Source of the DNA: Phallusia mammillata
Lineage: Eukaryota
Direction of reading: 5' to 3'
Length of the DNA: 64,000 nucleotides
Assembly (NCBI GenBank): GCA_965637545.1
Contig: OZ281497.1
Span: 9,052,001 to 9,116,000 of the forward strand
Shown: positions 33,065 to 56,571 of the stretch, in pieces
Position numbering within the stretch: position 1 is the stretch's first letter
Layout of the letters: each line of letters starts with the position of its first letter
The notes under the pieces: model-generated
Databases searched by the model: none
What the model saw: only the letters and a program-made list of their open reading frames with translations
What the model was told of the DNA's origin: nothing
Made by a program: the position numbers and the translations under genes

Positions 33065-33790
33065 AGTGTAGAGTTAGTACATAAGGAGGGATAAATTGTC
33101 GCTTACCGTTGAGAAAGTTTGGTAAATGTGGCTGTTTTATCATTGTTGTTAAAATGGCATGGAAGGCTGCCAATAGTTTTCACATCAGTAATAAACCAGT
33201 ATTTGACAAATATATTTACTTACGTTTTAGGCTAATGCCACGTGGCCCATTCCCCCACTTGCATTCAATGACATCTGACAGTTAAAATCTGAAAGTTCCC
33301 ATGAAAATGTTAATTGATTGACTGACTAATTCAATAGACACAAGGAGGGACTTTATCTTCAGGTATCAACTCACTCTCCCGTCACGTTGTAACGATACTC
33401 AATACGTTAGTGCGTTTTCGTCATATAACAACCTTATATCGATAAACTGTCCTTACAGTTATTTAAATTATTAATGATTGTTTATGAAAAACCGTTTCTC
33501 GAATGGCAAGATAACAATATTATTGCCCTTTCCTGTGTTTTTCCTGCGGACGCCCATGATTTCTTCTGTGTATTCTGATTAATGTGATTATATAGTTAAA
33601 CTGTATGCTGCTGATAATGGATTTAGAAAATTGGATTATCCACAAATTACGTATGACCTCCAGAAAGGCTCTTTATGCTTATTCTTCGTCAACTGAAATG
33701 TTCATTCTGTTTACAACAGACTATTCAGTAACTTATACAGGGCTTCGAATGTCGTATAGAAGCGTGTATAACCCTTACTTAAGGACTAAG
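33065..33790 (+). pseudogene. Inverted, internally deleted remnant of a VIT-CUB gene
   Basis: 33065-33120 matches the reverse complement of the upstream region at ~50890-50935. 33230-33300 matches the exon-2 start (ANATWPIPP..AFNDI). 33345-33440 and 33640-33790 match parts of the terminal CUB (FIFRYQLTLPSRCNDTQY; MFILFTTDYSVTYTGLRMSYRSVYNP). Confidence 0.8.
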
Positions 33791-34731
33791 TTTAAACACT
33801 TCTTTTAATATTAATTTTGGGAATTGCTTCGTGGCATTACTACAAAATATCGACTGATAGTTTTGTGGTTTTTTATTGCCGTGTGTTAGTTTCTGGTAGG
33901 TTTATAACTTAAAAGGACGATGTTCAAAATATGTAATTTAAAGTTAGCTGAGTCTCACAGTTCTTGTATGTATTTATTTAAGTAATGTTGAAATTGACCC
34001 ACAACTTCAAAAATTGCCACCATTGTCCCTCGATAGACGAAAGGCCCTTGGGAGGCGATCGCCCCCGTTGAAGAACACTGCTTTAAAACTAAGTTCGTAG
34101 TTTCATTTGTCTCCTAAAATCTGACCACTTCCACTGCAAAGAACTATGGGAACAGTGTACAAAGTTAGAAATAAATATGCTAGATATGAATCAGCATCAA
34201 GCTTTGAATGTGCGTGTATGGTTTGTAAATCTGTTTGTGGAGATTTACCCAAACAAATATTCCTATTTTTAGAATTTCCTTTCCTAGCAAAGATATCGTG
34301 GAATGTACACATATATTTTCGCGTAACCGGCAGAAATCGAGCTCGTTTGTTGACATCAACCTGATATGGATTTCACATACACAATGGGTTTTGTTGCATG
34401 GACAATGTGCGTTGAGCGAGCGATGGAAAATGAATTGTGCGGTCCAACAGAGCTACCTTTGTCAGTTCTTGGAAACCAAACAAACCGAGCATTCAGTGGC
34501 TGGTGTTGACAAGGTGTTTTCGGCCTTTTTTGTACTCTGTTTTTGCACCCATGGTTACATTAACAGTTTTACTGGAGTCCAATTCTTACTAAGTAAGTAT
34601 ATTTAAAGCCTATATGTATGGAAAGGTTTGATGCTACAATTTCAAGAAAAATATACAGCAGTTTTATTAGTAAATGTCTAATATCATGATTACATAACAG
34701 ATTTAAACTACCTATCGGTAGAATAACAAAT

Positions 34732-37700
34732 ATGCTCTGTGAAACAGTTTTAGCAAATGAGCTAAAGAAACAATGTCTGTCAAATGGAGTAGAAATCAAT
34801 CCCAAGGAATCGGCGAAAACTTTGCATCAGTTGGGTCTTGTGTACAAGGAAAAGAGCCCAGACAAGATAAGTCTAATTCAGAGTGTTGCTTTAATGACAT
34901 CAGCTGCATTGCGTCAACCAGACAATGTCCATGAAGTTAGAACAGATCTCAACACATTGTGTCTGCACATTTTAGATCTCGCAAAGGCCTCTAAACAGGA
35001 TATTACTTTATTTGATAACGCAATTTCAGAGGCAAAACGTGAAATTGCTAAGCTTCGTGTAACAACGCAACGTGAAATCGAAAAGTTAAAGCCAATAAAC
35101 GATGATCTTAAGGGACCAAAATTGACAAGAATAAGAAAGCAAAGAGTTCAACATATCAGGAAAATACAGGACTATGTTAGTGAAACGTATACCAAAATTA
35201 TGCAACACATTGCAAAGAATACTGTTGATATTATGGGAAAACCACCTTGCCAATTTGCTCTGATGGGAATGGGTTCTTTAGCCAGAAAAGAAATAACTCC
35301 ATATTCTGATTTTGAAAGCATTATTGTTTTGGAAGAACGAAATGGAACTTCCAAACAAGTACTAACCAACAAGTACTTAGCTATTCCGTGCCTTAACAAT
35401 CCTTTAGTCCCCGAAGAAGATTGGTTTTATGATGCCTACACTCCATGCGGAATATGTCCTGATGGACTTGCTCCCCAAGCCAGTAAAAATCCTTTGGGAA
35501 GACAAACAAAAACAAAGAAAAAACCGTGGACAACTGAGCTTATCAAACCAGTTAGTCAAATGGTAAAATACTTCGATACTGCGGAAGATCTTAAAAATGG
35601 TTATCATTTGGCGGATATGTTAACGACGACTTGTTTTGTTTTTGGAAATTATGTTGTATATCATGACTTCGAAAATAAGGTGCATAAAAAAATAAATAAT
35701 TTGCCAATGTTTAGTCAAAAGGCAGTGGAAACCATGCAAAAGGATTTTGAACAGTATTTGTTACCAAACTGTAGAACACATTTCACTGTGGATATTAAAC
35801 GTGTCGCTTATAGAAGCTGTTCACTTTTTATCATTGGACTTGGCCATTTACACGATTGCAAGTTTTCAAACTGTTTTCAGATCGTTGATAAACTGCGTGA
35901 ACGAAGAATCATTGACACTGCACTTCATGGGAAATTGCAGTTTTCATTATCAGTTGGATGTGAAATCCGTTTAAGAAATTACAACCAAGCTTCCAGTCAA
36001 AGCGACATTTTACATCAAACAATAAATCTTAATATTTCATCCTGCATCAACAACATGGCGACATGTATTGGCCCAAGAGCTTTGGTAGATGGATTGGCCA
36101 TTGCAAAATCATTACAAATGTATGTTATGTCATGTTTTACGGTTTGTTCTCGTTTAGACCCAAGTTTGATTGTTGAAAGATCAATTGGTGCAGCAGAGTT
36201 TGCCAGTTCAATGAAGTTGCATCGACTTACGATTAAGTTGATTCATGAATGTAAGGATATCGATGAATGTAAGAACGAAAAAATTCAAGTTCTCTTGCTA
36301 TTATGGTTAGCATTTAGTTTACATGGCTGTGAGGAATACAAAAAGTGTGTCAAACTCGTTAAGGCAAACCTCAAAAATATGAAGCAAAATGGCCTAATTA
36401 ACGCAGCATGCAGATTAATGATGACCTGCGCTCGAGCTTGGGTGGATTCCGGAAAATTCAAGAAAGCCCTTAAATATTACAGAAAAGTGAATTTTTATCT
36501 GTTTTTCAAACTCGCAAATTCTGTTACAAAACTGCAAATTAACATTGGAATTGGCGACTGTTATAAAAAACTAAGGCGCAATAAGAAAGCCTTGAAGTAT
36601 TTGAAACTGGCTTACAATGAAGTCAAAGATGATTTTAAAAACCATGCGGTTGGTGATGAGTATTATGAGTTGATGATGCATTATAGTATATGCCTTTATC
36701 GTGGAGGAAAATTTAATGAAGGAAAAAGGGTAAATGAAGAACTTTTAAAAGCCAGACGAAGCCTTCACGTTGATGAAGAATCAGACCTAGTGATCAATTT
36801 TGCATGTCTTGGAATAGGTTCTTGTTTAACTGGCCTGAAAAATTATGAAGAAGCTCTTGTGTATCTAAATCGATCTTGGCGGTGCAAGTGCATAAGAGAA
36901 GACTTCTGTCAAGATACAAGTGTCACCTGTGTGCGGTTAACGGCACAATGCTTAACAAACTTAGGAAGATCCTTTGAAGCCATTAGCTTCATTGCAGCAT
37001 ATTTAAATAGCAGCAAGAGTGAAACCACTGTCTTGGGCCAATTCTTTAATATTTGCGGACTCATGAACATCTTGTGGAGGTGTGGTTTTTATGAAGCATG
37101 TATTTTGGATAACAACTACAGAATATTTGCTTTAATGCCAATGAGACAAACCAAACACACCCGGAAGCGAATAGATATTCTCCGGCGACAAAATCAAGAT
37201 CTTCAGCAAATAATTGACCATTACGACCAACATCGTATTGATGATGAAACAAAGGAAATATTTAAAAAGGAACCTAAGGTTGAAATACTTCATTTGCTTA
37301 GACTGGGAAGCAGTCTTTTGAAACGTCAATGCATTGAAGAAGCAATAAATTGTTACAAAATGATCGAAATTCTTCTTTTAAAGGTTGAAATTGGACCTTT
37401 TATGTCTAAAGATGTTGAATTTCACAGTATGGTTTATCATGAAATTTCATACTCCCTCATCATGCAGCGCTACGGCCGCAGATCAATAAGGTATTCAAAA
37501 AAGGCCTTCCATCTTTCGTTTCATACACGTGGACCACGATTTGTAGACACCTGTGTTGACGCTGCGGTAATGCTTGCTGAAAGTTTGTATTGTTTAAAAC
37601 TCTTCACAGAAAGTATGGATGCTGCATGGCACGCTGTCAGGTTGTGTCTGCACGTGTATCCAAACTGCAGTTTTATTTCCAAATTCATGCACGCGGTAAT

Positions 37701-37917
37701 AATCGTTGCCGATTGCGAAGCCGCATTGGGCCTGGCAAGACCTACTCTTCCATTTCACTGTGCGCCATCAATATTTTTCAATGCACCTGGTCGATTTTTT
37801 CTGTTAAAAGCAGATGCAAGGCGCAACAAGTTGTTTGGCCTTGCACTAACGCTTTGCAACGTGCAAAAAGTTTTCATTACGAATGGATTATATCAAAACC
37901 TTTTCAATACATTTTAA
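34732..37917 (+). CDS. Intronless 1061-aa protein: N-terminal helical region, GlnD/GlnE(DUF294)-like nucleotidyltransferase, helical substrate-binding domain, C-terminal TPR array
   Basis: Uninterrupted 3186-bp ORF. Pol-beta-type signature FALMGMGSLARKEITPYSDFESIIVL. DUF294_C/GlnD-like helical module VDIKRVAYR...IVDKLRERRII...LQFSLSVGCEIRLRNY. Several TPR-like units (ARAWVDSGKFKKALKYYRK; IGDCYKKLRRNKKALKYLKLA; IGSCLTGLKNYEEALVYLNRS; LGSSLLKRQCIEEAINCYK). Domain calls are by motif recognition only. Confidence 0.8.
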   Translation: MLCETVLANELKKQCLSNGVEINPKESAKTLHQLGLVYKEKSPDKISLIQSVALMTSAALRQPDNVHEVRTDLNTLCLHILDLAKASKQDITLFDNAISEAKREIAKLRVTTQREIEKLKPINDDLKGPKLTRIRKQRVQHIRKIQDYVSETYTKIMQHIAKNTVDIMGKPPCQFALMGMGSLARKEITPYSDFESIIVLEERNGTSKQVLTNKYLAIPCLNNPLVPEEDWFYDAYTPCGICPDGLAPQASKNPLGRQTKTKKKPWTTELIKPVSQMVKYFDTAEDLKNGYHLADMLTTTCFVFGNYVVYHDFENKVHKKINNLPMFSQKAVETMQKDFEQYLLPNCRTHFTVDIKRVAYRSCSLFIIGLGHLHDCKFSNCFQIVDKLRERRIIDTALHGKLQFSLSVGCEIRLRNYNQASSQSDILHQTINLNISSCINNMATCIGPRALVDGLAIAKSLQMYVMSCFTVCSRLDPSLIVERSIGAAEFASSMKLHRLTIKLIHECKDIDECKNEKIQVLLLLWLAFSLHGCEEYKKCVKLVKANLKNMKQNGLINAACRLMMTCARAWVDSGKFKKALKYYRKVNFYLFFKLANSVTKLQINIGIGDCYKKLRRNKKALKYLKLAYNEVKDDFKNHAVGDEYYELMMHYSICLYRGGKFNEGKRVNEELLKARRSLHVDEESDLVINFACLGIGSCLTGLKNYEEALVYLNRSWRCKCIREDFCQDTSVTCVRLTAQCLTNLGRSFEAISFIAAYLNSSKSETTVLGQFFNICGLMNILWRCGFYEACILDNNYRIFALMPMRQTKHTRKRIDILRRQNQDLQQIIDHYDQHRIDDETKEIFKKEPKVEILHLLRLGSSLLKRQCIEEAINCYKMIEILLLKVEIGPFMSKDVEFHSMVYHEISYSLIMQRYGRRSIRYSKKAFHLSFHTRGPRFVDTCVDAAVMLAESLYCLKLFTESMDAAWHAVRLCLHVYPNCSFISKFMHAVIIVADCEAALGLARPTLPFHCAPSIFFNAPGRFFLLKADARRNKLFGLALTLCNVQKVFITNGLYQNLFNTF

Positions 37918-39187
37918 ACAAAGGCTAAAAAGGCAAAGTAAAGACCAACTTTTTGCAACATTCGTAGAATTCCAATCATCTTGCAATTTTTTTAAACAAA
38001 AGCGTTCTGTTGCATTATACTTAAGTTAAAAGGTTGCAATCGTAAAAAAATAGTGTAAATTACCTTACAAAGATTTTTTTTCATTTTTTAATCAAACAAA
38101 AACTTTTAGTCTTTTTTAAGTTTAGTTTTCGTTTTAAACTTTAATCGTTGCCCGTGCTGTGGTGTTGGCTGTGATCTTTTACTAAACCTAGTAAATAACT
38201 GATAACTATTAAACATCATTATAATCATTTCTGACAATGACATATTCCAATTTAAAGCTTTGTTTGCAAATGCTTCTATGTAGCTGTTTAGCATTACTAC
38301 GCAGTACTGCAGTCTAGTCGCCTACGCTGCTAGAAGCTGACTTCAACTGCGTTCTTTTTTTCACGGGCTTTTTTATGGACGTTTCCTAATGCGAATCCCC
38401 GTCTGTGTTTTTTGTTTGTTCCTGGTCGTTTCGGTCAGAACAACATTCTTGTGATGCTATGGTCTGGTTGCTCTGAAGCGCCACCACTCGTTTGGGATCG
38501 TTTGAAACTATTTGTTTATGAATAATGAGATACATGCCGGACCTGAATACATAGTTTTTATCTGAACTCTGCTGAAACTCTTTAAATTTAAATAATTCCG
38601 TTTATATGCGCTGTATTTTTAGCGTTAAGTGTGTTCGCAACCGGGCAAAGTCTCACTTTGTCACATTCTCTGCAATTTCTAAAATTTTATCCAAGTGACA
38701 AGAAAAATCTGCAGATATTTCGAGTGTTTGTTGCGTTTTTAACAGAGGTTACTTTGGTGGAGTGGTTTGTTGTTGAGCAGAAAGATTGAGAGAACTATAA
38801 GAACTGAGAACTAACTATAGGTTAGGCCAGTGCTCTTCAACCGGTGTGCACGGTGCACCCTAGGGCGCCCCAAAATGCATGGGGTGCACCAGTACGAAAA
38901 GGTATACAAGGGTGCATCGCGGACATAACAAATGGGATATGAGTGAAGGGTAACGCACTGATCATATATGCATACCCACGATTGCAATATACACATGTAG
39001 GACGACTTTCCTTTCCACCGATGTAAAATAATGTCCCTTGAGTTACTTATCTGATGATCAGGTTTATGACTACTGTATTGCAGTACAGATAGCAGTGCCT
39101 TAAACTATAGGCTACATTTATTTGCATTACAAATGTTTGGAATGGAAACAAAATAATTCATACATTCAAATAAAAAGTCAACAAATC

Positions 39188-41124
39188 CTACACGCTATTA
39201 GTGTGGTTAATTTCCAGGTCTGTCATTTCATCGCATCCCATTGGCTCGTTGGTCACCAATTCGTGAAAACATTTTCTTGCCAAACTTTTTCGAGCGTTGT
39301 AAATTAAAAACGAAACCATTTGTAGTAAAGGTTGTACAATCACACCCAAAAGGGTAATTATACCTATAGTCAATCCGGGATTACTACGCCAATCTAATAT
39401 GGGATAAATCGCTGAAATAACGCCAGCAAGATGAAGCATAAGACTAAAAAACGCGTATGCAAGGCCAAACGCAATTCCATGAATGACATGCAGTAATCTA
39501 ACGGTCAAGGAGCCGACAAACAAGTCGGCTATCAAAACCAAAATATTAACCAAGTGCAAGTGTATGGACAGAGGATGAAAAGCGAAAGCAGGAGGCAGAA
39601 GTCCTGCCAGTAAAGACCAAAATATAACGTCAACTATTATTGAAAACGTAAATGAGCAGTTGAAGAGTACCCACGTCACCTTGTGAAACCACTGAAGGTT
39701 TTGATTTCCTGTAAAATCAGACGGTTTAGTAAAAAAAATAACAAGTCGACCTGAAGTGGAAAGTGTATTCAACTTGTTCCAAGGTTTAACTTTTTACAAC
39801 CTTACATTTACTGTCGATAGGCTCAATTACTTAATTACTCTAGCTTTGTCTATTAAAGATATTTTAAGCAAAAGGTCAAAACCCAACCATAATGTGCATA
39901 CTGTTTTTTTTTATTCAAAACACATACTTTTTTGATGTGTCCTCTTTTCCAACCTGTCTTGCAGTACCTCGTGTATTGTTATACTTAACGACATTGTAAA
40001 GTACAGAATGGTCAGAACTTCGACCCAATTAGTGAGATAATAAATAAAATGGTAGTCTTTAACATAATTGCTTGCGGTCGCGTCAACAACTTGCCAAATC
40101 AGCCATCCAAGCATGTACAGCAAAAGAAAGAGTCGAAATATAATGAAAAATCTGTTGCTGAGTCCCCACTAAAACACAAAAAGGTTAAAAAAGCATATAA
40201 AACAAGAATTGTGTTTTAACACAATACGTTTGTTTTCAGTTTTTTATATGCTATTTAAGGTGTGGGGTTAAACAAGGGTGTGTGAAAAACAAAATGGCGA
40301 AGTAGGTCAAAAACATGATGCGCAAGAGAAAGTATTGCTGAACATTTGCTAGAATGGCTGTTTAATTCTTGCAGTAGGCTTAGTTAGCACTTTTGAACAT
40401 GTACATCTATATCACCGGAAATACAGTGAATAAAACATGCAGGTAGATATCAAATACATAACTGATTCAAACACCTTTATGTGCAGCGCAAAAAGTATGA
40501 TAGTGGTTTTTTTTTTGAGAAAGTATGTCGTGTTAGTTAAGAGTAATAGTCTGTGTTTCCGGTTTACCAAAAAATCGTGTAAGGCGAAAGTTTTAGGTCC
40601 AATTAACTGGCACGAGGGGCAAATCCCTCTGTCATGCACTTTTTAAATAAACGCTCTGTTGCTGTTGCGCTCACAAGAATCTTTAAATTAACAAAAATAT
40701 GCTAATTATGACTTTTGACCAAAGTAACTGCTGTCAATTCGAGTGAAATCATCCATACTTGCAACGTTGTCTAGTCCTAGTACAAAAGGCGAATATCGCT
40801 AGAAATCATTTTTTTGTAGGCTACGTGTTTGTCCGAAGTTCGAAATGCACCGATAGCAAAGTGCGCTAGTTTTTTATTGGTTTCTTTTTTTAGTTCTCCC
40901 AGTTCCAAACCAATTCAACGGTTTGCTTTAAGCTGTTTACTTTTTCGTTTGACGCTACTGTCGAAATGATACTTGGTTTCTTTTAGCCCAAGGCAAACCA
41001 ATACCAACTGACAATGCAAACTATTCTATTCATTACTCACTTGTGACTTGTAAAAGTATTTTCGTTCGCTTCCCTTGAAGCCAAAATTTTGCAACCGAAA
41101 CTCGTTATTCAATTGAAAGCACAT
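39188..41124 (-). CDS. Protein rolling stone-like / FAR-17a-AIG1-type multipass membrane protein (exons 41041-41124, 39928-40168, 39188-39708; 281 aa)
   Basis: Spliced product MCFQLNNEFRLQNFGFKG...FYKSQWG...YLTNW...WFHKVTWVLFN...VIFWSLL...HLHLVN...RLLH...IYPILDW has about six hydrophobic segments and rolling-stone-type motifs; splice phases 0 and 1 are compatible. Confidence 0.8.
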
Positions 41125-42017: not shown

Positions 42018-43830
42018 CGGTGCGGCTAACGGCACAATGCTTTACAAACTTAGGAAGATCCTTTGATGCAATTAGCTTCATTGCAGCACATTTAAAGAGC
42101 AGCAAGAGTGAAACCACTGTCTTGGGCCAATTCTGTAATATTAGCGGACTCATGGACATCTTGCGACGGTGCGGTTTTTATGAAGCATGTATTTTAAATA
42201 TCAACAATAGAATATGTCCTTTAATGCCAATGAAACAAACCAAACACACCCGGAAGAGACTAGATACTCTCCAGCGACAAAATCGAGATTTTCAGCAAAT
42301 GATTGACCATTACGACCAACATCATATTGATGATGAAACAAAGGAAACATTTCAAAAGGTACCTAAGGTTGAAATACTTCATCTGCTTAGACTGGGAAGT
42401 AGTCTTTTGAAACGTCAATGCATTGAAGCGGCAATGAATCGTTACAAAAACATCGAAAATATTCTTTCAAAGGTTGAAATTGGACCTTTTATGTCGGACG
42501 ATGTTAAGTTTCATAGTATGGTTTATCATGAAATTTCATACTCCCTCATCATGCAGCGCTACGGCCACAGAGCAATAAAGTATTCAAAAAAGGCCTTCCA
42601 TCTTTCTTTTCATACACGTGGACCACGATTTGAAGACACCTGTGTTGACGCTGCGGTTATGCTTGCTGAAAATTTGTATAGTTTGGAACTCCTTACAGAA
42701 AGTCTAGTTTCTACACGGCATGCTGTCAGGTTGTGTCTACATGTGTATCCCAACTGCAGTTTTATTTCGAAATTTATGACAGCGGTAATTATCGTTGCTG
42801 ATTGCGAAGCCGCATTGGGTATGGCAAGACCTACACTTCCATCACATTGTGCGCCGTCGATATTTTTCAATGCACCTGGTTGATTTTTCACGTTAAAAGC
42901 AGATGTAAAGCTCAAAAAGGCGTTTGGCCTTTCACTAACACCTTGCAAAGTGCAAAAAGTTTTCATTACAAATGGATTAGATCAATACCTTTTCAATAGA
43001 TTCTAGCAACAGCTAGAAAGGCAAAGTAAAGACCAACTTTTTGCAACATTCGTAGAATTCAAATCATTTTGCAAATTTTTTTGAACGAAAGCGTTGTGCT
43101 GCATTAAACTTAAGTTGAAAGGTTTGCAATTTAAAAAAAATAGTATAAAATCCCCTTAAAGAACTTGACATTTTTTAATCAAACAAAAACTTTTGGTATT
43201 TAGTTTTTTAAGTTTATTTTTTCGTCATATACTTTAATCGTTTCCCGCGCTGTGGTATTGGCTGTGATCTTTTACTAAATCTAATCAATAACTATTAAAC
43301 ATTATAAAATCATTTCTGACTATGACATATTCCAATTTGAAGTTGTTGTTTTTGCAAATGCTTCTGTGTAGCTATTTAGCAATACTACGTCTAGTCTCCT
43401 ATACTGCTAGATGCTGACTTCGAATGCGTCCTTTTTTCACGGGCTTTTTTATGGACTGCGAATCCCCGTCTGTGTTTTTTGTTTGTTCCTGGTAATTTCG
43501 TACAGAACAGCATTCTTGTGATGCTTTAGTCTGGTTGCTCTGAAGCGCCACCATCCGTTTGGGATTGTTTAAATTATTTGTTTATGATTAATGACATACA
43601 TGCCGGACCAACTGAATGCATAGTTTTTATCTGAACTCTGCTGAAGCTCTTTTAATTTAAAAATTTATGTTCATATAAACGTGTTCGCAACCGGTTTCTG
43701 TAATTTGTCACATTATCTGTAATTTCTAAAATTTTATTCAAGTCGGTGACAACAAAGATCTACAGACATTTCAAGTGTGTGTTGCGTTTTTGACACAGGT
43801 TACTTTGGTAAAGTGGTTTGTTGTGGAGCA
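42018..43830 (+). pseudogene. 3' fragment of an NTase-TPR paralogue plus its 3' flank
   Basis: 42018-42990 aligns to 36930-37917 with a premature stop (CGA>TGA, 42881-42883). 42990-43830 aligns to 37918-~38790. It begins abruptly after a MITE fragment at ~41930-42017. Confidence 0.92.
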
Positions 43831-44129
43831 GATTTATTGGGGCATAGCTTTTCAGCAATAGAGTGCTACAGCCTAGCTCAGGGGTGGCCAACCTTCTAGA
43901 TACCATTCGCCAACTTTTTAACATACTGTGTTGGATGCGCCATAAATGTCTCGTAACTTCACCTTCTATGACTACTTCTTGTATAGAGAGAAAGAGAAAG
44001 AAACAACTTTTGCTTTTGCTTACTTTAAGGATAGTAATAAGAAATAAGAACTATTAAGTAAAAAATAACTCTGATAAACTTGATGAAATTTATTTACCTG
44101 GTTTAATGAGATTTTTGAGCCTGTTTTGA

Positions 44130-45330
44130 TTTCGCCAGTTTTGCAACGATAAAAACATATACCATAATGCATCATTAACTCATAATACTCATCACTAACT
44201 GCATTATGTTTAATATCATGTTTGACTTCATCGTAAGCTTGTTTTAAATACTTCAATGCTTTCTTGTGGCTCCATATTTTTTATAACAGTCGCCAATGCC
44301 AAAGTTAATCTGCAGTTTTTGCATCAGAATTTGCAAGTTTAAAAAAATGATAAAAATTCACTTTTCTGTAATATTTCAGGGCTTTCTTGAATTACCTGGA
44401 ATCCACCAAACAGCGAGCGCAGGTCATCATTAGTAGGCATGCTGCGTTAACTAGGCCATTTTGTTTCATATTTTGAAGGTTTGCTTTAATGAGTTTTACA
44501 CACTTTTTTTATTTCTCACAGGAATGTAACTAAATGCTAACAAATATAGCAAACTTGATTTGTTTTGTTCTTATTTTCATCGATATCCCTACATTCATGG
44601 ATTAACCTAGTAAATCGATGCAACTTCATTAAACCGGCAAACTCTGCTGCAACAATTTGTCTTTCAACAATAAAACTGGGTTCGTAACGAGTACACACTG
44701 TAAAACGTGACATAACATACATATGTAATGATTTTACAATCCATCTACCAAAGCTCTTGGGCCAATACATGTCGTCATGTTGTGGATACTGTATGAAATG
44801 TTAAGATTTATTGTTTAAAGTAAAATGTCGTTTTGACTGGAAGCTTGGTTGTAAATTCTCAAACGCATTTCGCATCCAACTGATAATAAAAACTGCAATT
44901 TCCCATGAAGTGTCAATGATACCTCGTTCACGCAGTTTATCAACAATCTGAAAACAGTTTGAAAACTTGCTGTCATGCAAATGTCCAATAATGAAAAGTG
45001 AACAGCTTTTGAAAGCAAAACGTTTAATATTCAAAGCATGACCTACAGCTACTTGCCGCCGAATACTGTTTCGAATCATTTCTTTCGAAGACAGTTTCTT
45101 CTGCCTTTTCAGTAAATATTGGCAAATTATTAGTTTTATTTTCAAAGTCTTTATATACCACATAATTTCAATTAAGTCTTAATTAAGTAATTGGTCGTCA
45201 GCAGATCAGCGAAGTGATAACCGTTCTTAAGATCATGATCCGTATCTAAGTACTTTACCATCTGAGAGACTGGTTTGATAAGTTCGGTGATCTGAGGTTT
45301 TTTCTTTGTCATTGATTGTCTAATCGTAAT
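44130..45330 (-). pseudogene. Frameshifted middle fragment of an NTase-TPR paralogue
   Basis: The reverse strand reads TKKKPQITELIKPVSQMVKYLDTDHDLKNGYHFADLLTT, then SCSLFIIG..LHDSKFSNCFQIV, GCEMRLRIYNQASSQ and YLKQAYDEVK...YYELMMHYGICFYR. It matches ~35510-36710 with many indels. Confidence 0.88.
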
Positions 45331-46239
45331 ATTGTCTTCCCTATACCCTGAATAAATAATTTGAATTTGTAGTCTCGACTGTGATGCAATAAACTTTCTT
45401 TGGACGATTTCTGTTTGTTGTAATCCTATGAAACTAAGTACAATGAATCCTACATTTTATGCAGGAACATCGACAAGTCAATTATTTTTCGAACGTTACA
45501 AAAGTTATTGAATTGTAGGATGTTGCGTGCGGGTCGTAGTTTAGTGAACCCTGCTCTATAATTAAAAAGCTTTGCTGGATAACCCCTAACTAACTATCGT
45601 CTCGCACCAATTGATTTGGACGTCGACGTGTCGCGCTTGCACATTGTAATTGGACGCTATAGTTTTAGATTGAGGCAGTTCTCGCCTAGGCCTCGTGGTG
45701 TACGGTTTTCATTTATATCTAACGTCGGTTCCATTTTATATTCTATTAAAATTGTTCTAGTTGGGACCCTGTTCGTAACTATGCGGTAAGCCACTATTGT
45801 AGGGTGACCTGTTTTTTACCAAGGTAGGGACGATGATCTTGCTTGTGTAAGCTTACTTTATTTAGTAAAAGATAACCATATTGCCTTTCCCAAAAATCCT
45901 AGGCAAAATTCGGGATAATTTCGCCTTGGAAAGGAAGCCGGGTGCACCAACTACAACGAAAAAGTTAGTTAGTGTGATAAGTCAATAACTGATTTGTTCC
46001 ATTTTAGCTTACTATTAGCGGTGTTCAGAATTTTAGTTATTGTAAAAAAAAAAGAATCACCCTCGTAATGCGTTAATGCTTCGCTGAATTTTAAGCACTG
46101 AAAAAGCTAGAAACACATACTATTGTATCTGTTACTAAATCAACCATACCAAACTACATCAAAGTGGCAAATTCGTTTTAAGATTTTTTGTGTGTGTCTA
46201 AAACAGTGCAAATCGATAGTTGTGCATAAATAAATTATT

Positions 46240-47330
46240 CAAACAACCTAAACGGGTGGCGGCGCTTCAGAGCAACCAGAGCGTAGCACAAGGAACTTGA
46301 GCGAATGGTCTGGCTCGTCTGTCCCATATGCAGACATACAAAAACCTGATCGTGATTCGTCCCCGGGAGTGTTCTGGGTTCGAACCCTGTGAATAAAAAA
46401 GAATGTTGTTCCGGCCGAAATGTCCGAACAGCCTGAACCAGGTACAAAAAAAGTACAGATCGGGATAAAAAGCCTGTGAAAAAAGAGCGCAGTGCAAGTC
46501 AGCTTCTAGAGGCCTTGACAACTAGACTATAGTATTGTAGTATCAGTACTGTACAGTACTGTAGTAAGCAACTACACAGAAGAATTTGCAAAAAAAGCTA
46601 TAGTTTAAATTTTAGAATACAGTGCTTTAATGACAATTGTGTTTTTGTTAGAAATGATTTCATAATGTTTACTAGTTTTTTAAAAATCTATTAAAAAGGT
46701 ATTAATCTAATCCATATGTAATGAAAACACTGTAAGGTGCTATATCAAGATCTTTGCTAATGTCAATGACATTATTTGGTTGACGCAATGCAGCTGATGT
46801 CATTAAAGCAACACTATGAATGAGACTTATCTTGCCTCTTTTCCTTGTGCACAAGTCCAACTATGCAAAGTTTTCGCCGATTCCGTGGTATTGATATCTA
46901 CTCCATTGGACAGACATTGTTTCTTTAGCACGTTTGCTAAACCCGTTTCACCGAAAATGTTGGTTAATCTACCGAAAAATAGTCTTAAATCTATTATGTA
47001 GCCAAGATATTAGCCATTTATGTATAAAACTGCTGTATATTTCAGATTATATACTGTTTGTTTTTCTCAAATTCAAAGTAAAGATGTTTAGCAATTTAAA
47101 CTGGGATCGTCTCAACTGCGCTTCTGTATAGCATCGAAGACTCCGGTAAAACTGTTAATGTAACCATGGGTGCAAAATAAGGATGAAAACACCTTGTCTA
47201 CAAAACCCATTGAATGCTTGGTTGGTGTGGTTTCCACGAACTGAAAAAGGTAGCTGTTGGACCACACTATTCATTGTTTATCACTGGCACATCGTACATA
47301 CGGCAAAACCCATTGTGTTAATGAACCGCA
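46240..47330 (-). pseudogene. Third NTase-TPR copy: upstream region and first ~65 codons joined by deletion to the 3' flank
   Basis: Reverse complement of 47000-47330 resembles ~34370-34730, and of 46760-46975 resembles 34732-34950. Reverse complement of 46240-46700 resembles ~38200-38500. Confidence 0.8.
46288..46400 (+). mobile_element. tRNA-derived SINE copy
   Basis: GGAACTTGAGCGAATGGTC...GGGTTCGAACCCTGTGAATAAAAAA, homologous to 52127-52264. Confidence 0.75.
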
Positions 47331-48069
47331 TGTCCTCGTGTGGTTATTGTCAACAAACAAGTTTGACTTATGACATTCTGATGCAAGAGGGTTGTTTACT
47401 TACATGTCGAATCTGGCGATATACGTACTTATTCCAATGTGTGTATTTCCAGTAGGCGGGGCGTTACTGGTTGGGTATGGGCCATGCTCTAATCGTTTGC
47501 AGTCCAGATATACTCGAATTCACACTCTTTTGCGTTAAGCTGCAGTTTCACCCTTCTCTATGATTGTGCAGAATGCTAAAAATAGACAAGAGCAAGTGCC
47601 ACTTAACAGTGTTGAGCAATAGATGTCTGGCAGGACAATCTTAGATTATATATTTTTTCCTTTTTTAGACTTAATTACGACAAATAAAATCCCGGGCTTG
47701 GCCACAATTTGAGTTAAAATCCATACACCGATTAAAACACTGACTGTAAAATGATTTATGTATTTCTTTTTTTATATTTTTATTTGTTTTGAATATGACA
47801 TACCAAGAATGTTCCTTTAAGAAAAAAAAACAAATTTAAGAAAAAAACTAACAACACAAACAATTCATGATTGCGTTTCGTTTATTTAGCGACCAAGCAA
47901 AATTTAACCATCTTATATTATTCAATTCACAAATATAAGTTATAAACCAATATAAACCAACCAGAAACCAACACACAGAAACATCAACCGTCAAATAACA
48001 AGTGGATAATTTGTACTAATGCCACAAAGCAATTACGACCAAAATTAATGTGAAAACAACTGTTTTGAC

Positions 48070-50782
48070 TTAGTTCTTTCGTGTAGGGTTATACACGCTT
48101 TTATACGATATTTGAAAACCTGTATAAGTCACTGATCCATCGGTTGTAAATACAATAAACATGTCAGTTGTCGACGAATAAACGTAAGAGCCTGCCTGGG
48201 GGTCAAACGAAATTTGTGGATAATCCAAAGAAGAACCATCAAAAACCATCAGATGATCGAAACCACCTTCTATATCCATATCAGCAACGTACAGTTCAAT
48301 TATATTATCATAAGGAGATTGAATACTCCAAGTGGAACAAAGATTATTTGAATAACTGTAAGGGTAGTTTATCGATGTAAAGTTGTTATATGACGAATAC
48401 GCATAAAGGTATTGAGTATTATCATTACAGCTTGGCGGGAGAGTGAGTTGGTTTCCAAAATTAAAGCCCATCCTTGTTTGTGACGAATCAGTCACTAAAT
48501 TAATATTTATGTATCGAGAAACAATTGGATCGGTAGGATAGCTACTCCCAGTAAAGGTAAGTGTACCATTATCCGTATTAATATAAACATAATCATAGTT
48601 GTACTCTAAATCAAGATCTATAATTTCCAGTGAAATGAAAAGATTGCAATTACTCCTTAAATACCACCAGCAATCAATATTGTTATAATATTGGCCGGGA
48701 TAGTTTGGAGAGGATAGGTAAGAGTATTGACCCGCTTGTGGATACAAATACTCCGAATTACATGTTTCATTAGTAATCGATTGGAGACTATATGTAAAGT
48801 TAAAACCCCTTCGCGTTACGGAACTGTCACTTTCAAAGTGAATCATCATATATCCCGTGGCAAAAAATTGACCATTTGTGATATCTGATCCAGTTAAAGT
48901 TGCAATAATGTTGCTTTGGTTGAAGAGATAAACATTATCCCAGCCATGTTCTATATCAAAATCACTAATTTCCAATATTATTACTTGATCGGAAGAATAA
49001 GAATAGATATACCACCAACAGTCAGCATTATCATAGTACTGGTTTGGGTAATTTGGTGAAGACAAGTAATAATTGTTACCTATTTGTGGATATAAGTATT
49101 CATTGTCACAATGATTCACACTGGTCGAATCTAGGTGATACATAAAGTTAAAACCACGACTGGTCACGGAACCATCAGTTACAAAGTTAATCTGCATGTA
49201 ACTAACTGCGAAAAACTGGTCGTTGGTATAATTTGATCCAGTTAAAGTTTCAATAAGGTTACTTTGGTTGTACAGATTAACATAATCGTAGTGGTTTTCC
49301 AATTCAAAATCAATAACTTGCAATGTGATCAACTGATTGTATGAATAAGAATAAATACGCCACCAACAATCAATGTTGTTGGAATACTCGTCAGGATAGT
49401 TGGGAGAAGGCAAGTAATAGTATTGACCCGTTTGTGGATAGAAATATTCGTCACCACAGGTTTCACTATCTCCAGAACCAGTTGTGTCAGTGATCACCTC
49501 AGCAGTTGTTGTTACAACGGGAAAAGTTTCGGTTGTTGAGCTAATAACACCAACCGAATTACTTACACTTGCCCTAAAACCAGTTTTTGATCCAGAACAA
49601 TCAGAAGTCAAATGCAACGACATACTACTTCCAGTAGACTGGTAGATGGTCAAATTGTTCTGATCGGTTAATGTACCAGATAAAATGGCAATAACTGGAC
49701 CGTGAAATGAGTTACCGTCATAGATGGTGAGTCGGTCGCAGCATTCCTCGATGTCGATATCGACGATATTAAGTTGAACAACATCATTGTCGGGGACACG
49801 AACCAACCACGCGATGTCAGCAGAGTTCGGGTACGGTTGAGGATAATTTGGAGAAAATATTTCACCCACCAAATTCTCAACAGTGGAGCCGTAAAGATCA
49901 AATAGCACCTGAGCTCTGTTTTGTATCTTCACATCGGAGTCGATCATGTCTTGCACGGTTTCCTTGTACTCGATGTTGAAGGTGACCTCCTTGTTGCCTT
50001 TGATGTGGACTGTGTTCTTTGCAGTTTGAATGTCAACGTTGAAATCACCTGTAAAATGCACAACGTAAGTAAACACAACGTGAGTAAACCAATGGCGATG
50101 CGATCTAGCAACAAAATTAACTCATTTTGTGTCCAAAAAATCAAAATGGAGTTACAAAAAACATTAAGGTAATAGCTGACCTAAACGTTTTTCCGAATGC
50201 ATGGCAGCCACGTGATCATTCCTCTTTGCATTTTGAAGCACCTCTTGCGCCTCCTTGTGGTTGGTTTTTCTTCCCTTGTACGCCACTCCCTCGGTGTGCA
50301 TTGTAAACGACGTCATCTCTGCGTAGTCGGGGAGGTAAGTGTGAAATCCGACGTCATCGGCTGTTTCACCATTGTTCATGATTGTGACCTTCAGATTTTG
50401 AATGTCATTGAATGCAGGTGGTGGAATGGGCCACGTGACATTTGCCTGAAACATAAGTAAAATATATTTCCATTTTAACCCATAATCAGCAAAAAGACTA
50501 AGCAAAACGTAACCTATTTCAAATGTCCAGCGTACTAATAAACAAACAATTGTAGAACCAATATCATTTAAAACAAACATGGAAGCAATCTAATAAGATA
50601 AACGGGCGACAAAATTTCTAAGCTTTATGACTAAAAATGAATAAAATAATTTCACATACTTTTTCGTAGATTGGTTGGGGCAGAAGTCCAATGACGAAAG
50701 CTTCATCGTCTTTTGTCGCATCGCCGAAGCTGGTCAAAGCCCACAGAAAAAATATGACAGTAGACAATTTGTAACAAAGCAT
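48070..50782 (-). CDS. Secreted VIT + 5x CUB domain protein (exons 50660-50782, 50181-50445, 48070-50048; 788 aa)
   Basis: Signal peptide MLCYKLSTVIFFLWALTSFG. VIT-like LKVTIMNNGETADDVGFHTYLPDYAEMTSFTMHTEGVAYKG...EAQEVLQNA...VTFNIEYKE. Five CUB units (SPNYP..Y..N.DC.W...ELE..YD.V...TDGSVT..GF). Splice phases 0 and 1 are consistent. No transmembrane segment. Confidence 0.88.
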
Positions 50783-55707: not shown

Positions 55708-56571
55708 CAGGGGCGGGCAACATACGGCCCGCGGGCCGGATCCGGCCCGCGACGGGATTTTGAGCGGCCCGCAGACAGTTACCGGTCTTACATGATAGTT
55801 TGGCCCGCGGCCACAGTCTGTCGCAATTCCCCACTACTTGCTTACTACGTCAAATTATAGTTGTAACGGACAGTAACGCTCCCCAATAGCAAAAAACTTT
55901 CCCGCCGTTGTTACCATTAGTTGTAAAATTAATTTTTAAACATTTTGCATCCTAAACCAACCCTCTTTAACCGCTAAATAAATAATTCAGCTCTTTACGC
56001 CACTTATCGAAAATTAAGCACTTTTGTATCTCCTAGGAAGGCACCACGTCAGTAGCTCTACCGCCTGCTTTCAGGTAGAACTACTAACACTGTAATTTGG
56101 CTGGCCCCTGGTTAAAAATTGTTCGATAGGTGACGCAACGGAGCATAGGCGTTTATGGTGCTGACTCAGCAATTTGGGTATATGGCACCATAACCGCCTA
56201 TGCTCCGTTGCGCCACCTATCGAACAATTTTTAACCAGGGGCCAGCCAAATTACAGTGTTAGTGGTACTACCCTTCTTTCACGGTTTCCTTTGTTTCCAC
56301 ATGTGTAGCCTCGTTAGTGTTTCAGCAGTATCTAAGTCTGTGGTGTATGCATTAAATTTGCTGTGGTCAATAATTTTATGTTATATCAGTTAGATTGTTC
56401 GGACTGTATTGTAATTGTGACGTTCTTGACTGTATTTGGTTTAGGCGGTCAAAATTCCGTTGTAAATCACTGGATAAATACGCGATTAATGTATCGATTC
56501 AGGAATCCGGCCCGCCAAGTACTTCATTTTCCCATATCAGGCCCGCCGACTGAAGAAGTTGCCCGTCCCTG
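55708..56571. mobile_element. hAT-type MITE, 864 bp, inserted in the last codons of the Gypsy integrase
   Basis: TIRs CAGGGGCGGGCAAC / GTTGCCCGTCCCTG; TSD GTCTACAC. Removing it restores ...DGVDGCPTGVGPF* immediately before the PPT. Confidence 0.92.
56083..56263. repeat. Near-perfect palindrome: 79-bp arms, 23-bp spacer
   Basis: 56083-56161 is the reverse complement of 56185-56263 with 2 mismatches; weaker pairing extends to ~56074/56272. Confidence 0.95.

What the first reader, a model, noticed from the sequence alone, without database searches (positions are those of the whole stretch)
34732..37917. Animal gene coupling a bacterial-style GlnD/GlnE(DUF294) nucleotidyltransferase to a TPR array: candidate sensor-effector system
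Seen: a single-exon 1061-aa ORF among intron-rich neighbours, with hGS...DxE motif FALMGMGSLARKEITPYSDFESIIVL, a following helical module with DIKR...LRERRII...EIRL, and about 8-10 TPR-like repeats. Established: GSxxRxE...SDxD/E plus this helical domain defines GlnD/GlnE/DUF294 nucleotidyltransferases, bacterial protein uridylyl/adenylyl-transferases that are not a standard animal family; TPR arrays act as ligand sensors in many immune proteins. From memory (unverified), similar DUF294+TPR proteins occur in environmental Chlamydiae. Inference: a horizontally acquired or retroposed NTase-TPR family expanded in this lineage, possibly a sensor that NMPylates a target or makes a nucleotide signal, analogous to cGAS/OAS or anti-phage NTases. 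Local birth-and-death of paralogues fits an immune-type family.
Basis: partly seen in the sequence, partly recalled or inferred. Interest (0 to 1): 0.88.

Follow-up and report, generated by a model that had tools for sequence, protein, structure and literature searches.

The report
Tunicate-type GlnE/DrrA-fold nucleotidyltransferase-TPR gene, core-deleted copy
This is a real, intact gene of a large, unstudied invertebrate family that joins a bacterial-style protein-nucleotidylating enzyme (the fold of GlnE and Legionella DrrA) to a long TPR arm, but this copy alone has lost a core helix of the enzyme and may survive as a non-catalytic binder.

Summary
The 1061-aa ORF (34732-37917, +) and every quoted motif are there. 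Pfam DUF294 scores above its cut-off. A high-confidence model of the nearest paralogue matches DrrA (Z 23.5) and GlnE (Z 18.5-19.2), far above any other nucleotidyltransferase. The catalytic motif reads G-X11-D-X-E. About 12-13 TPR-like hairpins follow.

The gene is one of at least 45 copies in this 240-Mb genome. These sit in a 100%-supported clade with Ciona and Clavelina. Amphioxus has a very large set, octocorals have members, and a few intracellular bacteria (Holosporaceae, Parachlamydiaceae) carry expansions. A recent transfer into this lineage is therefore not supported.

New here: the focal copy alone lacks 20 residues, the helix after the D-x-E strand. Its own model loses confidence in that region. 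Its branch still shows purifying selection, unlike the rearranged pseudogene pieces 4-10 kb downstream.

I found no RNA evidence and no paper on the animal family. The scan has reported this family before on other DNA of the same genome (s1-351710, s1-364003).

Best reading: a protein-NMPylase family with a TPR targeting arm, and a catalytically compromised focal member.

The parts
34732..37917 (+). Intact intronless ORF, 1061 aa, ATase(DUF294)-TPR family member
34732..35001 (+). N-terminal helical hairpins (aa 1-90), TPR/14-3-3-like, family-specific. The same region is matched in some Holosporales copies.
   Evidence: Z about 8 to Tom70/14-3-3 over model residues 1-90
35254..35331 (+). Catalytic strand-turn-strand with G181-S182 ... 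D193-F-E195 (G-X11-D-X-E), aa 175-200
   Evidence: (invariant columns); motif definition from PMC12409994
35368..35373 (+). Site of the focal-specific 60-nt (20-aa) in-frame deletion, between N213 and K214 (nt 35370|35371). The missing residues are the helix after the D-x-E strand (L002 aa 214-233, within helix 207-226 of the model).
35419..35466 (+). Conserved loop DWFYDA...GICPDG (aa 230-245) with invariant D234 and D244, candidates for the third metal-binding carboxylate
   Evidence: the assignment of a role is inference
35716..36156 (+). Helical bundle (about aa 329-475) equivalent to DUF294_C / the ATase C-subdomain
   Evidence: (weak DUF294_C hit in L007)
36181..37728 (+). TPR-like solenoid, about 26 helices (aa 484-999), about 12-13 hairpins
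33313..33906 (+). Upstream flank similar to the 3' end of the VIT/CUB gene at 47951-48504 (-). It is part of the duplicated segment.
42020..43832 (+). Decayed partial copy: C-terminal third (aa 734-1061, one TGA) plus 3' flank, 85% nt identity to focal 36931-38781
   Evidence: (L010)
44146..45321 (-). Decayed inverted copy of the middle part (focal nt 35500-36702), 81% nt identity, split over three frames
45322..45365 (-). Remnant in the pseudogene of the helix-coding DNA that the focal gene lacks
46748..47372 (-). Decayed inverted copy of the 5' flank plus the first ~72 codons (focal nt 34331-34949), 74% nt identity

Best explanation
The ORF is a functional or recently functional member of an intronless, lineage-expanded invertebrate family. 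The family architecture is: N-terminal helical hairpins, then a GlnE/DrrA-type adenylyltransferase module (Pol-beta core with G-X11-D-X-E, plus a DUF294_C-like helical subdomain), then about 12 TPR-like hairpins.

By analogy with the only characterised enzymes of this fold, intact members most likely transfer AMP or UMP from an NTP onto a protein side chain. Those enzymes are GlnE on glutamine synthetase, DrrA/SidM on Rab1, and more distantly GlnD on PII. The TPR arm and N-terminal hairpins would choose or sense the target. This step is inferred, not shown.

The focal copy is special. After a local duplication it lost the 20-residue helix that packs behind the catalytic strands. It kept the catalytic carboxylates and stayed under purifying selection in its helical and TPR parts. 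I therefore read it as a catalytically weakened or dead pseudoenzyme that survives through its binding function, for example as a regulator or decoy of active paralogues.

The family is old in tunicates and shared with amphioxus and octocorals. Its link to a few intracellular bacteria reflects inter-domain transfer of unknown direction. It is not a recent gain by this genome.
For: Fold: the AF2 model of the nearest intact paralogue has pLDDT 90.4 and pTM 0.90. Foldseek gives DrrA 1.2e-7 and GlnE 1.5e-6 and 2.4e-6. VIA-align gives DrrA Z 23.5 (319 aa, rmsd 3.8), GlnE Z 19.2 and 18.5, and the next class (ANT/KNTase) about Z 7.5. ESM Atlas shape matches to bacterial DUF294+DUF294_C proteins have TM up to 0.77.

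Sequence: Pfam DUF294 is above its cut-off in the focal gene, the paralogues and the Holosporaceae homologue. G181, S182, E187, S192 and E195 are invariant, and D193 is at least 90% conserved, over 64 homologues. D193 is invariant over the 35 full-length sequences.

Deletion: the 20-aa gap is seen only in the focal copy. The spacing from the catalytic motif to AIPCL is 44 aa in 21 paralogues, 41 in L002 and 21 in the focal copy. The pseudogene neighbour keeps part of the deleted DNA. The focal full-length model has pLDDT below 50 at residues 191-193, 204-217 and 231-254. In the paralogue model, the 10-residue blocks covering its residues 191-270, the same region before the 20-residue offset, average 66-97.

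Selection: dN/dS is 0.25 against L002. On the focal branch N/S is 71/64 against 90/26 on the pseudogene branch (Fisher p 4e-5). For the piece covering aa 257-657 it is 45/46 against 57/14 (p 7e-5).

Family and phylogeny: (823 cluster representatives at E <= 1e-30).
Against: No enzymatic data exist for any member of this family or for any DUF294 protein, so the activity and the substrate class are analogy only. No transcript evidence was found: RNA-guessed runs of the species hold none of the ORF, and the only holders are DNA runs. AlphaFold confidence is not a measure of the effect of a deletion, and the two models used different alignments and lengths. A remodelled loop could still support catalysis, since all the acidic residues are kept. 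The N/S contrast for the C-terminal piece alone is not significant (p 0.18). The focal branch shows more synonymous changes than the pseudogene branch (64 against 26), and piece A is almost equidistant from the focal gene and L002. Gene conversion or a different age for the pieces may therefore distort the branch counts. When the deletion happened within the branch is unknown.
Confidence: 0.55

Rival explanations
1. The focal protein is a fully active nucleotidyltransferase. The 20-residue helix is dispensable or replaced by neighbouring elements, and the gene works like its paralogues.
For: All candidate catalytic residues are kept: G181-S182, D193, E195, D234, D244. Purifying selection acts on the focal branch. 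In the NTase-region tree its terminal branch (0.10) is not longer than that of L002 (0.14).
Against: The helix is present in all 63 other sequences of alignment A1 and in all other own copies where it could be examined. It lies in the core of the Pol-beta fold, directly after the D-x-E strand. The focal model loses confidence across residues 191-254. The branch selection test did not cover residues 75-256.
Confidence: 0.22
2. The focal gene is a young pseudogene in the making: no longer expressed or functional, with an ORF that is still open by chance.
For: It carries a unique core deletion. No RNA evidence was found. It sits in a locus with decayed copies, and the family shows frequent gene death.
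Against: All 1061 codons are open. The focal-branch N/S is 1.1, against 3.5 for the neighbouring pseudogene and about 3.9 expected from the site counts. There are no frameshifts or stops, whereas the neighbour has six stop-creating changes in 708 codons.
Confidence: 0.13
3. The family makes a nucleotide second messenger (cGAS/OAS/CD-NTase-like) after the TPR arm senses a ligand, rather than modifying a protein.
For: It has a Pol-beta core with a repeat-type sensor arm, a lineage-specific expansion and tandem arrays. There is a weak match to PADLOC candidate PDC-S09 (E 0.004).
Against: The closest structures are protein-modifying ATases, with a large gap to everything else. The helical C-subdomain is of the DUF294_C / KNTase_C type, not the Mab21 or OAS type. 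Pfam, NCBIfam and PADLOC gave no CD-NTase, cGAS or OAS match.
Confidence: 0.07
4. The gene was recently acquired by this animal lineage from bacteria (Chlamydiae-like or Holosporaceae-like symbionts).
For: The gene is intronless. DUF294 is mainly bacterial. The same N-helical + NTase + TPR architecture is found in Holosporaceae and Parachlamydiaceae (PMC4209131).
Against: The own copies lie in a clade with Ciona and Clavelina (SH-aLRT 100, stem length 1.23), separate from all bacterial rows. Identity to the Holosporaceae protein is only 25%. Bacterial carriers are rare: 3 strong carriers among 61 related genomes. They are intracellular symbionts, so transfer may have gone the other way. The GC content of the gene equals that of its surroundings.
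Confidence: 0.03

Closest known systems
DrrA/SidM adenylyltransferase domain of Legionella pneumophila (PDB 6yx5, 3nku)
   Same: It is the best structural match: Z 23.5 over 319 of 339 residues. It has the same two-subdomain ATase fold and a G-X11-D-X-[DE] motif, and there is a weak Pfam SidM_N match (motif from PMC12409994).
   Different: Sequence identity is only 12-15%. DrrA carries GEF and P4M domains instead of TPRs and is a secreted bacterial effector. Our family has D-x-E rather than D-x-D. No activity has been shown here.
GlnE (glutamine synthetase adenylyltransferase) N- and C-terminal NT domains (PDB 1v4a, 3k7d)
   Same: Same fold (Z 19.2 and 18.5, about 310-324 aligned residues) and the same order of Pol-beta core followed by a helical subdomain.
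   Different: GlnE has two tandem NT modules and a regulatory linker and no TPRs. No NCBIfam GlnE model matched. Here there is a single module, and the organism is an animal.
Bacterial DUF294/DUF294_C 'signal-transduction' proteins (CBS, cNMP-binding or Cache sensor + DUF294)
   Same: Same Pfam family (PF03445). ESM Atlas shape matches have TM 0.55 by the query and up to 0.77 by the target over residues 95-493. Both follow a sensor-domain plus NTase logic.
   Different: In the bacterial proteins the sensor is N-terminal and of a different kind, and there is no TPR arm or N-terminal hairpins. In the tree they are separated from the TPR family by a branch of 2.2 changes per site on each side of the root. 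Their biochemical function is also unknown.
Neochlamydia NEX2 family and the Holosporaceae / Parachlamydiaceae DUF294-TPR proteins
   Same: They have the DUF294 NTase followed by a C-terminal TPR array and form multi-copy expansions (PMC4209131). Some Holosporales copies also match the N-terminal hairpins.
   Different: NEX2 proteins carry an F-box and sometimes OTU domains, and others carry ankyrin or methyltransferase domains. Identity to the focal family is about 25%. They are bacterial, presumably effectors.
FICD/HYPE, the TPR-containing metazoan AMPylase
   Same: An analogy of logic only: a TPR domain coupled to a protein-AMPylating domain in animals (PMC12409994).
   Different: The catalytic fold is unrelated (Fic, not Pol-beta). 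FICD is a single-copy ER membrane protein, whereas this is a large cytosolic-looking family with no signal peptide evident in the sequence.

Membership tests
Pfam DUF294 (PF03445) / GlnE-DrrA-type adenylyltransferase fold | Score above the Pfam gathering threshold | tested here: met
   38.9 bits against 21, E 9.9e-10. Paralogues score 28.9-41.6 bits.
Pfam DUF294 (PF03445) / GlnE-DrrA-type adenylyltransferase fold | G-X11-D-X-[DE] catalytic motif on the strand-turn-strand | tested here: met
   G181, then 11 residues, then D193-F-E195. These columns are invariant or at least 90% conserved in 64 homologues.
Pfam DUF294 (PF03445) / GlnE-DrrA-type adenylyltransferase fold | Complete Pol-beta core, including the helix that follows the D-x-D/E strand | tested here: not met
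   The focal copy lacks 20 residues, equal to L002 aa 214-233. The Pfam match ends at profile position 81, against 102 in paralogues. The focal model has pLDDT below 50 there. The feature is met in the paralogue L002.
Pfam DUF294 (PF03445) / GlnE-DrrA-type adenylyltransferase fold | Helical C-terminal subdomain (DUF294_C / KNTase_C type) after the core | tested here: met
   The structural alignment to DrrA and GlnE runs to model residue 487-495, and to bacterial DUF294+DUF294_C models over 95-493. By sequence there is only a sub-threshold DUF294_C hit in L007.
Pfam DUF294 (PF03445) / GlnE-DrrA-type adenylyltransferase fold | Nucleotidyl-transfer activity | not testable with these tools
   This needs an enzyme assay.
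GlnD, [protein-PII] uridylyltransferase proper | NT domain plus HD phosphohydrolase and ACT domains; equivalog score | tested here: not met
   NCBIfam GlnD models score 15-17 bits against cut-offs of 631-799. Pfam finds no HD or ACT domain. The UniRef name 'Protein-PII uridylyltransferase N-terminal domain-containing' reflects only the NT domain.
TPR repeat proteins | Tandem helix-turn-helix repeats that match TPR profiles | tested here: met
   TPR_1 scores 36.9 against 27.8 and TPR_2 scores 30.8 against 27. About 26 helices lie between residues 484 and 999 in the model.
cGAS/OAS/CD-NTase signalling nucleotidyltransferases | Mab21/OAS-type fold or profile match | tested here: not met
   There is no such hit in Pfam, NCBIfam or PADLOC. 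None appears among the structural matches listed, which go down to Z 5.6 and were drawn from Foldseek's top-ranked chains only.
Neochlamydia NEX2 (F-box + DUF294 + TPR) | N-terminal F-box (with or without OTU) before DUF294 | tested here: not met
   Pfam finds no F-box or OTU domain in the focal protein. The DUF294 + TPR part is shared.
Tunicate-type ATase-TPR clade (this report) | Placement inside the clade that holds the Ciona and Clavelina proteins | tested here: met
   The clade of 47 rows has SH-aLRT 100. The focal copy is sister to L002 with support 100.

The most novel reading that the evidence does not exclude
Invertebrate chordates and octocorals carry a third, so far unrecognised class of endogenous eukaryotic protein AMPylases/NMPylases, of the GlnE/DrrA ATase type and distinct from FICD and SelO. 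These would be deployed as a diversifying family of TPR-guided sensor-effectors in innate immunity or allorecognition. The same module would be exchanged with intracellular bacteria that use it as an effector. The focal copy would be a catalytically dead decoy or regulator retained by selection.
Probability: 0.15. Interest if true: 0.85.

Novelty: new variant of a known kind. Interest (0 to 1): 0.5.

Why it matters
A 2025 review names only FICD and SelO as endogenous eukaryotic AMPylases, and it describes the adenylyltransferase type only in bacteria: GlnE and Legionella SidM/DrrA (PMC12409994). This family has about 800 cluster representatives at 50% identity. It has dozens of copies per tunicate genome and many more in amphioxus. 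If it is active, protein nucleotidylylation of the bacterial type would become a widespread animal signalling or defence chemistry.

The focal gene adds a natural experiment. It is a selected copy whose catalytic core is damaged while its binding arm is intact, which can separate binding from catalytic roles.

The patchy sharing with Holosporaceae and Parachlamydiaceae, both intracellular bacteria, also makes the family a good case for studying gene exchange between hosts and symbionts.

The gene itself is an ordinary member of a family already auto-annotated in databases, and this scan has already flagged the family elsewhere in the same genome.

Tried and rejected
- Single-sequence phmmer of L002 against PDB found nothing at E <= 1. 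The profile of A1 against PDB gave only E about 0.5 to DrrA at the catalytic motif, below coiled-coil noise. The fold assignment therefore rests on structure comparison.
- Expression: the only runs holding the stretch cover gene and intergenic DNA evenly, so they are DNA. RNA-guessed runs of the same species label hold none of the ORF. This is no proof of silence.
- Taxonomy of the metagenomic homologues: the look-up of encoding contigs and the listing of cluster members gave no names. 'Tunicate' is inferred from the named hits and the tree.
- Literature searches (DUF294+TPR; DUF294 alone; uridylyltransferase+tetratricopeptide+Ciona; amphioxus+nucleotidyltransferase+TPR) found no paper on the animal family.
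- PADLOC gave only a marginal PDC-S09 match, so I dropped a link to known anti-phage systems.
- The sigma-70 promoter and terminator scan upstream is irrelevant for an animal gene and showed nothing.
- Dating the deletion with the neighbouring pseudogene worked only partly. The pseudogene has replaced or lost the part equivalent to focal aa 75-256, apart from a roughly 40-nt remnant of the helix-coding DNA.
- The two pseudogene pieces have different distances to the focal gene and L002, so I rejected treating them as one duplicate of one age.
- Searches were coordinate or handle slips and were corrected.
- Complex prediction was not used, because there is no candidate partner.
Full report
**Observation**

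The ORF at 34732..37917 (+) is intact, 1061 aa, and by far the longest in the window. Base composition is flat across the gene and its surroundings at about 37% GC.

Pfam gives DUF294 (PF03445) at E 9.9e-10, 38.9 bits against a cut-off of 21. TPR_1 and TPR_2 are also above their cut-offs, and there is a weak SidM_N match. NCBIfam GlnD equivalogs score far below their cut-offs: 15-17 bits against 631-799. The protein therefore shares only the nucleotidyltransferase module with GlnD.

**Fold**

I built an alignment of 64 N-terminal halves (A1) and modelled the nearest intact paralogue, L002 residues 1-520. The model has mean pLDDT 90.4 and pTM 0.90.

- Foldseek against PDB gave only four matches at E <= 0.001: DrrA/SidM (6yx5_B, 1.2e-7) and GlnE (1v4a, 1.5e-6; both chains of 3k7d, 2.4e-6 and 6.3e-6).
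- VIA-align gave DrrA Z 23.5 (319 of 339 residues, rmsd 3.8), GlnE N-domain Z 19.2 and GlnE adenylylation domain Z 18.5.
- The next class, aminoglycoside nucleotidyltransferases, scores about Z 7.5. No cGAS, OAS or CD-NTase chain appears among the rows listed, which go down to Z 5.6 and come only from Foldseek's top-ranked chains.
- Against the ESM Atlas, residues 95-493 superpose on bacterial DUF294+DUF294_C proteins fused to CBS, cNMP-binding or Cache domains (TM up to 0.77 by the target).
- Residues 1-90 form TPR/14-3-3-like hairpins.

The catalytic motif reads G181-X11-D193-F-E195. This is the G-X11-D-X-D pattern that a 2025 review gives for SidM and GS-ATase, with E in place of the last D (PMC12409994). 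G181, S182 and E195 are invariant and D193 is at least 90% conserved across the 64 sequences. D193 is invariant across the 35 full-length sequences.

The full-length focal model has pLDDT 80.2 and pTM 0.71. It shows about 26 helices between residues 484 and 999, so about 12-13 TPR-like hairpins.

**What is new about this copy**

In an alignment with 14 paralogues, the focal protein alone lacks about 20-23 residues directly after SDFESIIVLEE. Pairwise against L002, the gap is exactly 20 residues (FQWFATVFQIILVRLGETIL, L002 aa 214-233), between focal N213 and K214, at nt 35370|35371. Most of that segment lies within helix 207-226 of the L002 model, the helix that follows the D-x-E strand in the Pol-beta core.

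- The spacing from the catalytic motif to the conserved AIPCL motif is 44 residues in 21 own-genome paralogues, 41 in L002 and 21 in the focal copy only.
- The focal Pfam match ends at profile position 81, whereas in paralogues it runs to about 102.
- In the focal model, residues 191-193, 204-217 and 231-254 have pLDDT below 50. In the L002 model, the 10-residue blocks covering its residues 191-270, the same region before the 20-residue offset, average 66-97. This is suggestive only, because AlphaFold confidence does not measure the effect of a deletion and the two models used different alignments.
- Contigs of two DNA runs reproduce nt 35298-35908 without a difference, so the deletion is not an assembly slip in this record. 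The runs may, however, come from the assembled individual.

**Local history**

The window holds rearranged, decayed copies of the focal gene:

- 42020-43832 (+) equals focal 36931-38781 at 85% nt identity. It covers aa 734-1061 plus the 3' flank and contains one TGA.
- 44146-45321 (-) equals focal 35500-36702 at 81%, split over three reading frames.
- 46748-47372 (-) equals focal 34331-34949 at 74%, covering the 5' flank and the first ~72 codons.
- 47951-48504 (-) equals the focal upstream flank 33313-33906. This is the 3' end of the neighbouring VIT/CUB gene.

The ancestral unit therefore seems to have been 'CUB gene followed by ATase-TPR gene'. On the right the CUB gene survives and the ATase-TPR gene has decayed. 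On the left the reverse is true.

The decayed copy keeps a roughly 40-nt remnant that aligns with the 3' part of the helix-coding DNA missing from the focal gene. The deletion is therefore specific to the focal lineage and younger than that duplication.

The two pseudogene pieces differ in their distances to the focal gene and L002. They may have different ages or may have undergone gene conversion.

**Selection**

Nei-Gojobori dN/dS between the focal gene and L002 is 0.25, with dS 0.69. I then polarised changes with L002 as the outgroup:

| Region compared | Focal branch N/S | Pseudogene branch N/S | Fisher p |
|---|---|---|---|
| Both pieces (708 codons) | 71/64 | 90/26 | 4e-5 |
| aa 257-657 | 45/46 | 57/14 | 7e-5 |
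| aa 734-1061 | 26/18 | 33/12 | 0.18 |

The pseudogene ratio is near the site ratio of about 3.9 expected under neutrality. The focal copy has therefore been kept by selection over most of its separate history, at least in its helical and TPR parts. The catalytic region (aa 75-256) could not be tested this way. One caveat applies: the focal branch carries more synonymous changes than the pseudogene branch, which points to gene conversion or unequal ages.

**Family and distribution**

A six-frame search of the window's own 240-Mb genome found 87 matching segments, belonging to about 45 or more copies. Most lie in clusters on contig C7, and most are single open frames of 860-1150 aa, some with stops. 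The nearest paralogue (71% identity) lies 1.25 Mb away on the same contig, C4. The first ~200 residues are 60-72% identical among copies. The next ~540 residues are 42-50% identical. For most copies the last ~300 residues do not align at all, so the TPR arm is the fast-diverging part.

In the large protein database the best named hits are Clavelina lepadiformis and Ciona intestinalis at 30-41% identity. UniRef names them 'Protein-PII uridylyltransferase N-terminal domain-containing protein'. A profile search of 1.84 billion cluster representatives found 823 proteins at E <= 1e-30 and 2402 at E <= 0.001.

A scan of bacterial and archaeal genomes found one carrier, Holosporaceae bacterium 'Namur'. 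Its protein is 1295 aa with DUF294 + TPR and is 25% identical. That genome has at least 7 DUF294 ORFs. Among it and 60 relatives, three genomes carry 13-24 matches each, three carry weak matches and 55 carry none.

Searching with the Holosporaceae NTase region returned many Branchiostoma proteins (three species and hybrids), octocorals (Paramuricea, Xenia, Dendronephthya) and Parachlamydiaceae MAGs.

**Tree**

The tree has 101 NTase regions, was built with IQ-TREE LG+C20 (quick search) and is rooted on two canonical bacterial DUF294 proteins.

- All own copies, all six Ciona and Clavelina proteins and 22 unnamed metagenomic proteins form one clade with SH-aLRT 100 and a stem of 1.23.
- Inside it, 17 own copies form a lineage-specific expansion (support 99), and the focal copy is sister to L002 (support 100).
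- Two older own lineages (L051, L052) fall outside that own-genome expansion, next to unnamed metagenomic rows inside the clade.
- Amphioxus proteins form several basal clades.
- The bacterial rows group weakly (support 80) with unnamed sequences and two octocoral proteins.

The family is therefore old within tunicates and is not a recent import. Transfer between eukaryotes and intracellular bacteria did happen, but its direction is unresolved.

**Mechanism**

Shown: the fold, the conserved catalytic motif, the TPR arm, the expansion, the deletion, and the selection on the focal branch.

Inferred: intact members transfer AMP or UMP to a protein target, as GlnE and DrrA do, with the TPR arm and N-terminal hairpins selecting or sensing the target. 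The focal copy, with its damaged core but conserved arm, would act mainly through binding.

An immune or allorecognition role is suggested only by the pattern: tandem arrays, birth and death, a fast-diverging arm, and occurrence in sessile or aggregating marine invertebrates and in symbiont effector-like proteins. Nothing here tests it.

**Expression and literature**

No run on record as RNA holds the stretch, and two RNA-guessed runs laid on it show nothing over the ORF. Four literature searches found no paper on the animal family. The closest is a general paper on conflict-system domains in amphioxus that does not mention this family.

Earlier notes of this scan describe the same family in two other stretches of this genome and reach the same family-level reading. 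My results agree with them independently and add the focal-specific deletion, the local rearranged pseudogenes and the branch test.

**Verdict**

The gene is a member of an uncharacterised but database-annotated family, and it is a probable pseudoenzyme variant of that family.

Noticed in passing
window 56524-60330 (-): A Ty3/gypsy-type retrotransposon in three long overlapping ORFs: a gag-like ORF with zf-CCHC, RT + RNase H, and an integrase with H2C2 and rve domains. It sits in a GC-rich island (about 48% against about 36% background). Observed only.
   Followed up: partly
window 48070-50076 (-) and 62749-63984 (-): Two long exons encoding 5 and 3 or more CUB domains. The first-stage notes call these genes VIT + CUB. 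The 3' end of the first one is duplicated upstream of the focal gene at 33313-33906.
   Followed up: partly
window 39188-39772 (-): A 194-aa ORF matching Pfam Rost (protein rolling stone), profile positions 123-257. It is probably one exon of a neighbouring gene.
   Followed up: no
window about 33891-34087 and 38816-39012: Word depth in the two DNA runs spikes 25-fold to 400-fold here, so these are short high-copy repeats flanking the gene. Many loose contig ends lie at 38822-38918, and the RNA-guessed run X3 also holds this repeat.
   Followed up: no
window 35327->35414: One contig in each of the two DNA runs joins these positions, skipping 86 nt with only 22 nt on the shorter side, at single-copy depth and right at the deletion region. 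It is most likely cross-mapping of a paralogue. An alternative haplotype is not excluded.
   Followed up: no
focal gene vs L002 (G000:C4:10332712-10335954): dS between the two copies rises along the gene: 0.38 for codons 1-130, 0.50 for 131-480 and 0.96 for 481 to the end. This suggests gene conversion that homogenises the 5' part of family members.
   Followed up: partly
G001, G002, G032 (Holosporaceae 'Namur' and its two carrier relatives; loci L033-L057): Three small genomes (1.7-2.4 Mb) each carry 13-24 segments matching the animal-type ATase profile, in ORFs of 1000-3700 aa, some in tandem. Unnamed contigs and Parachlamydiaceae MAGs in the protein search carry ankyrin (P0155) or methyltransferase (P0182) fusions. 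In the sample of 61 genomes, 55 gave no match at E <= 0.001.
   Followed up: partly
P0143, P0144-P0149, P0262, P0264 (amphioxus and unnamed): Some proteins contain 3-5 tandem ATase modules (for example P0143 with 5 matched stretches and P0262 at 3112 aa). P0147 joins the module to CUB, LDLa, Tectonin and Hyd_WA domains. These may be real fusions or merged gene models.
   Followed up: no
ESM Atlas cluster, row 5: A cluster of short (about 292 aa) DUF294 proteins, labelled mostly Ciliophora, superposes on model residues 1-342, including the family-specific N-terminal hairpins. This hints that protists, as hosts of Holosporaceae-like bacteria, also carry the module.
   Followed up: no
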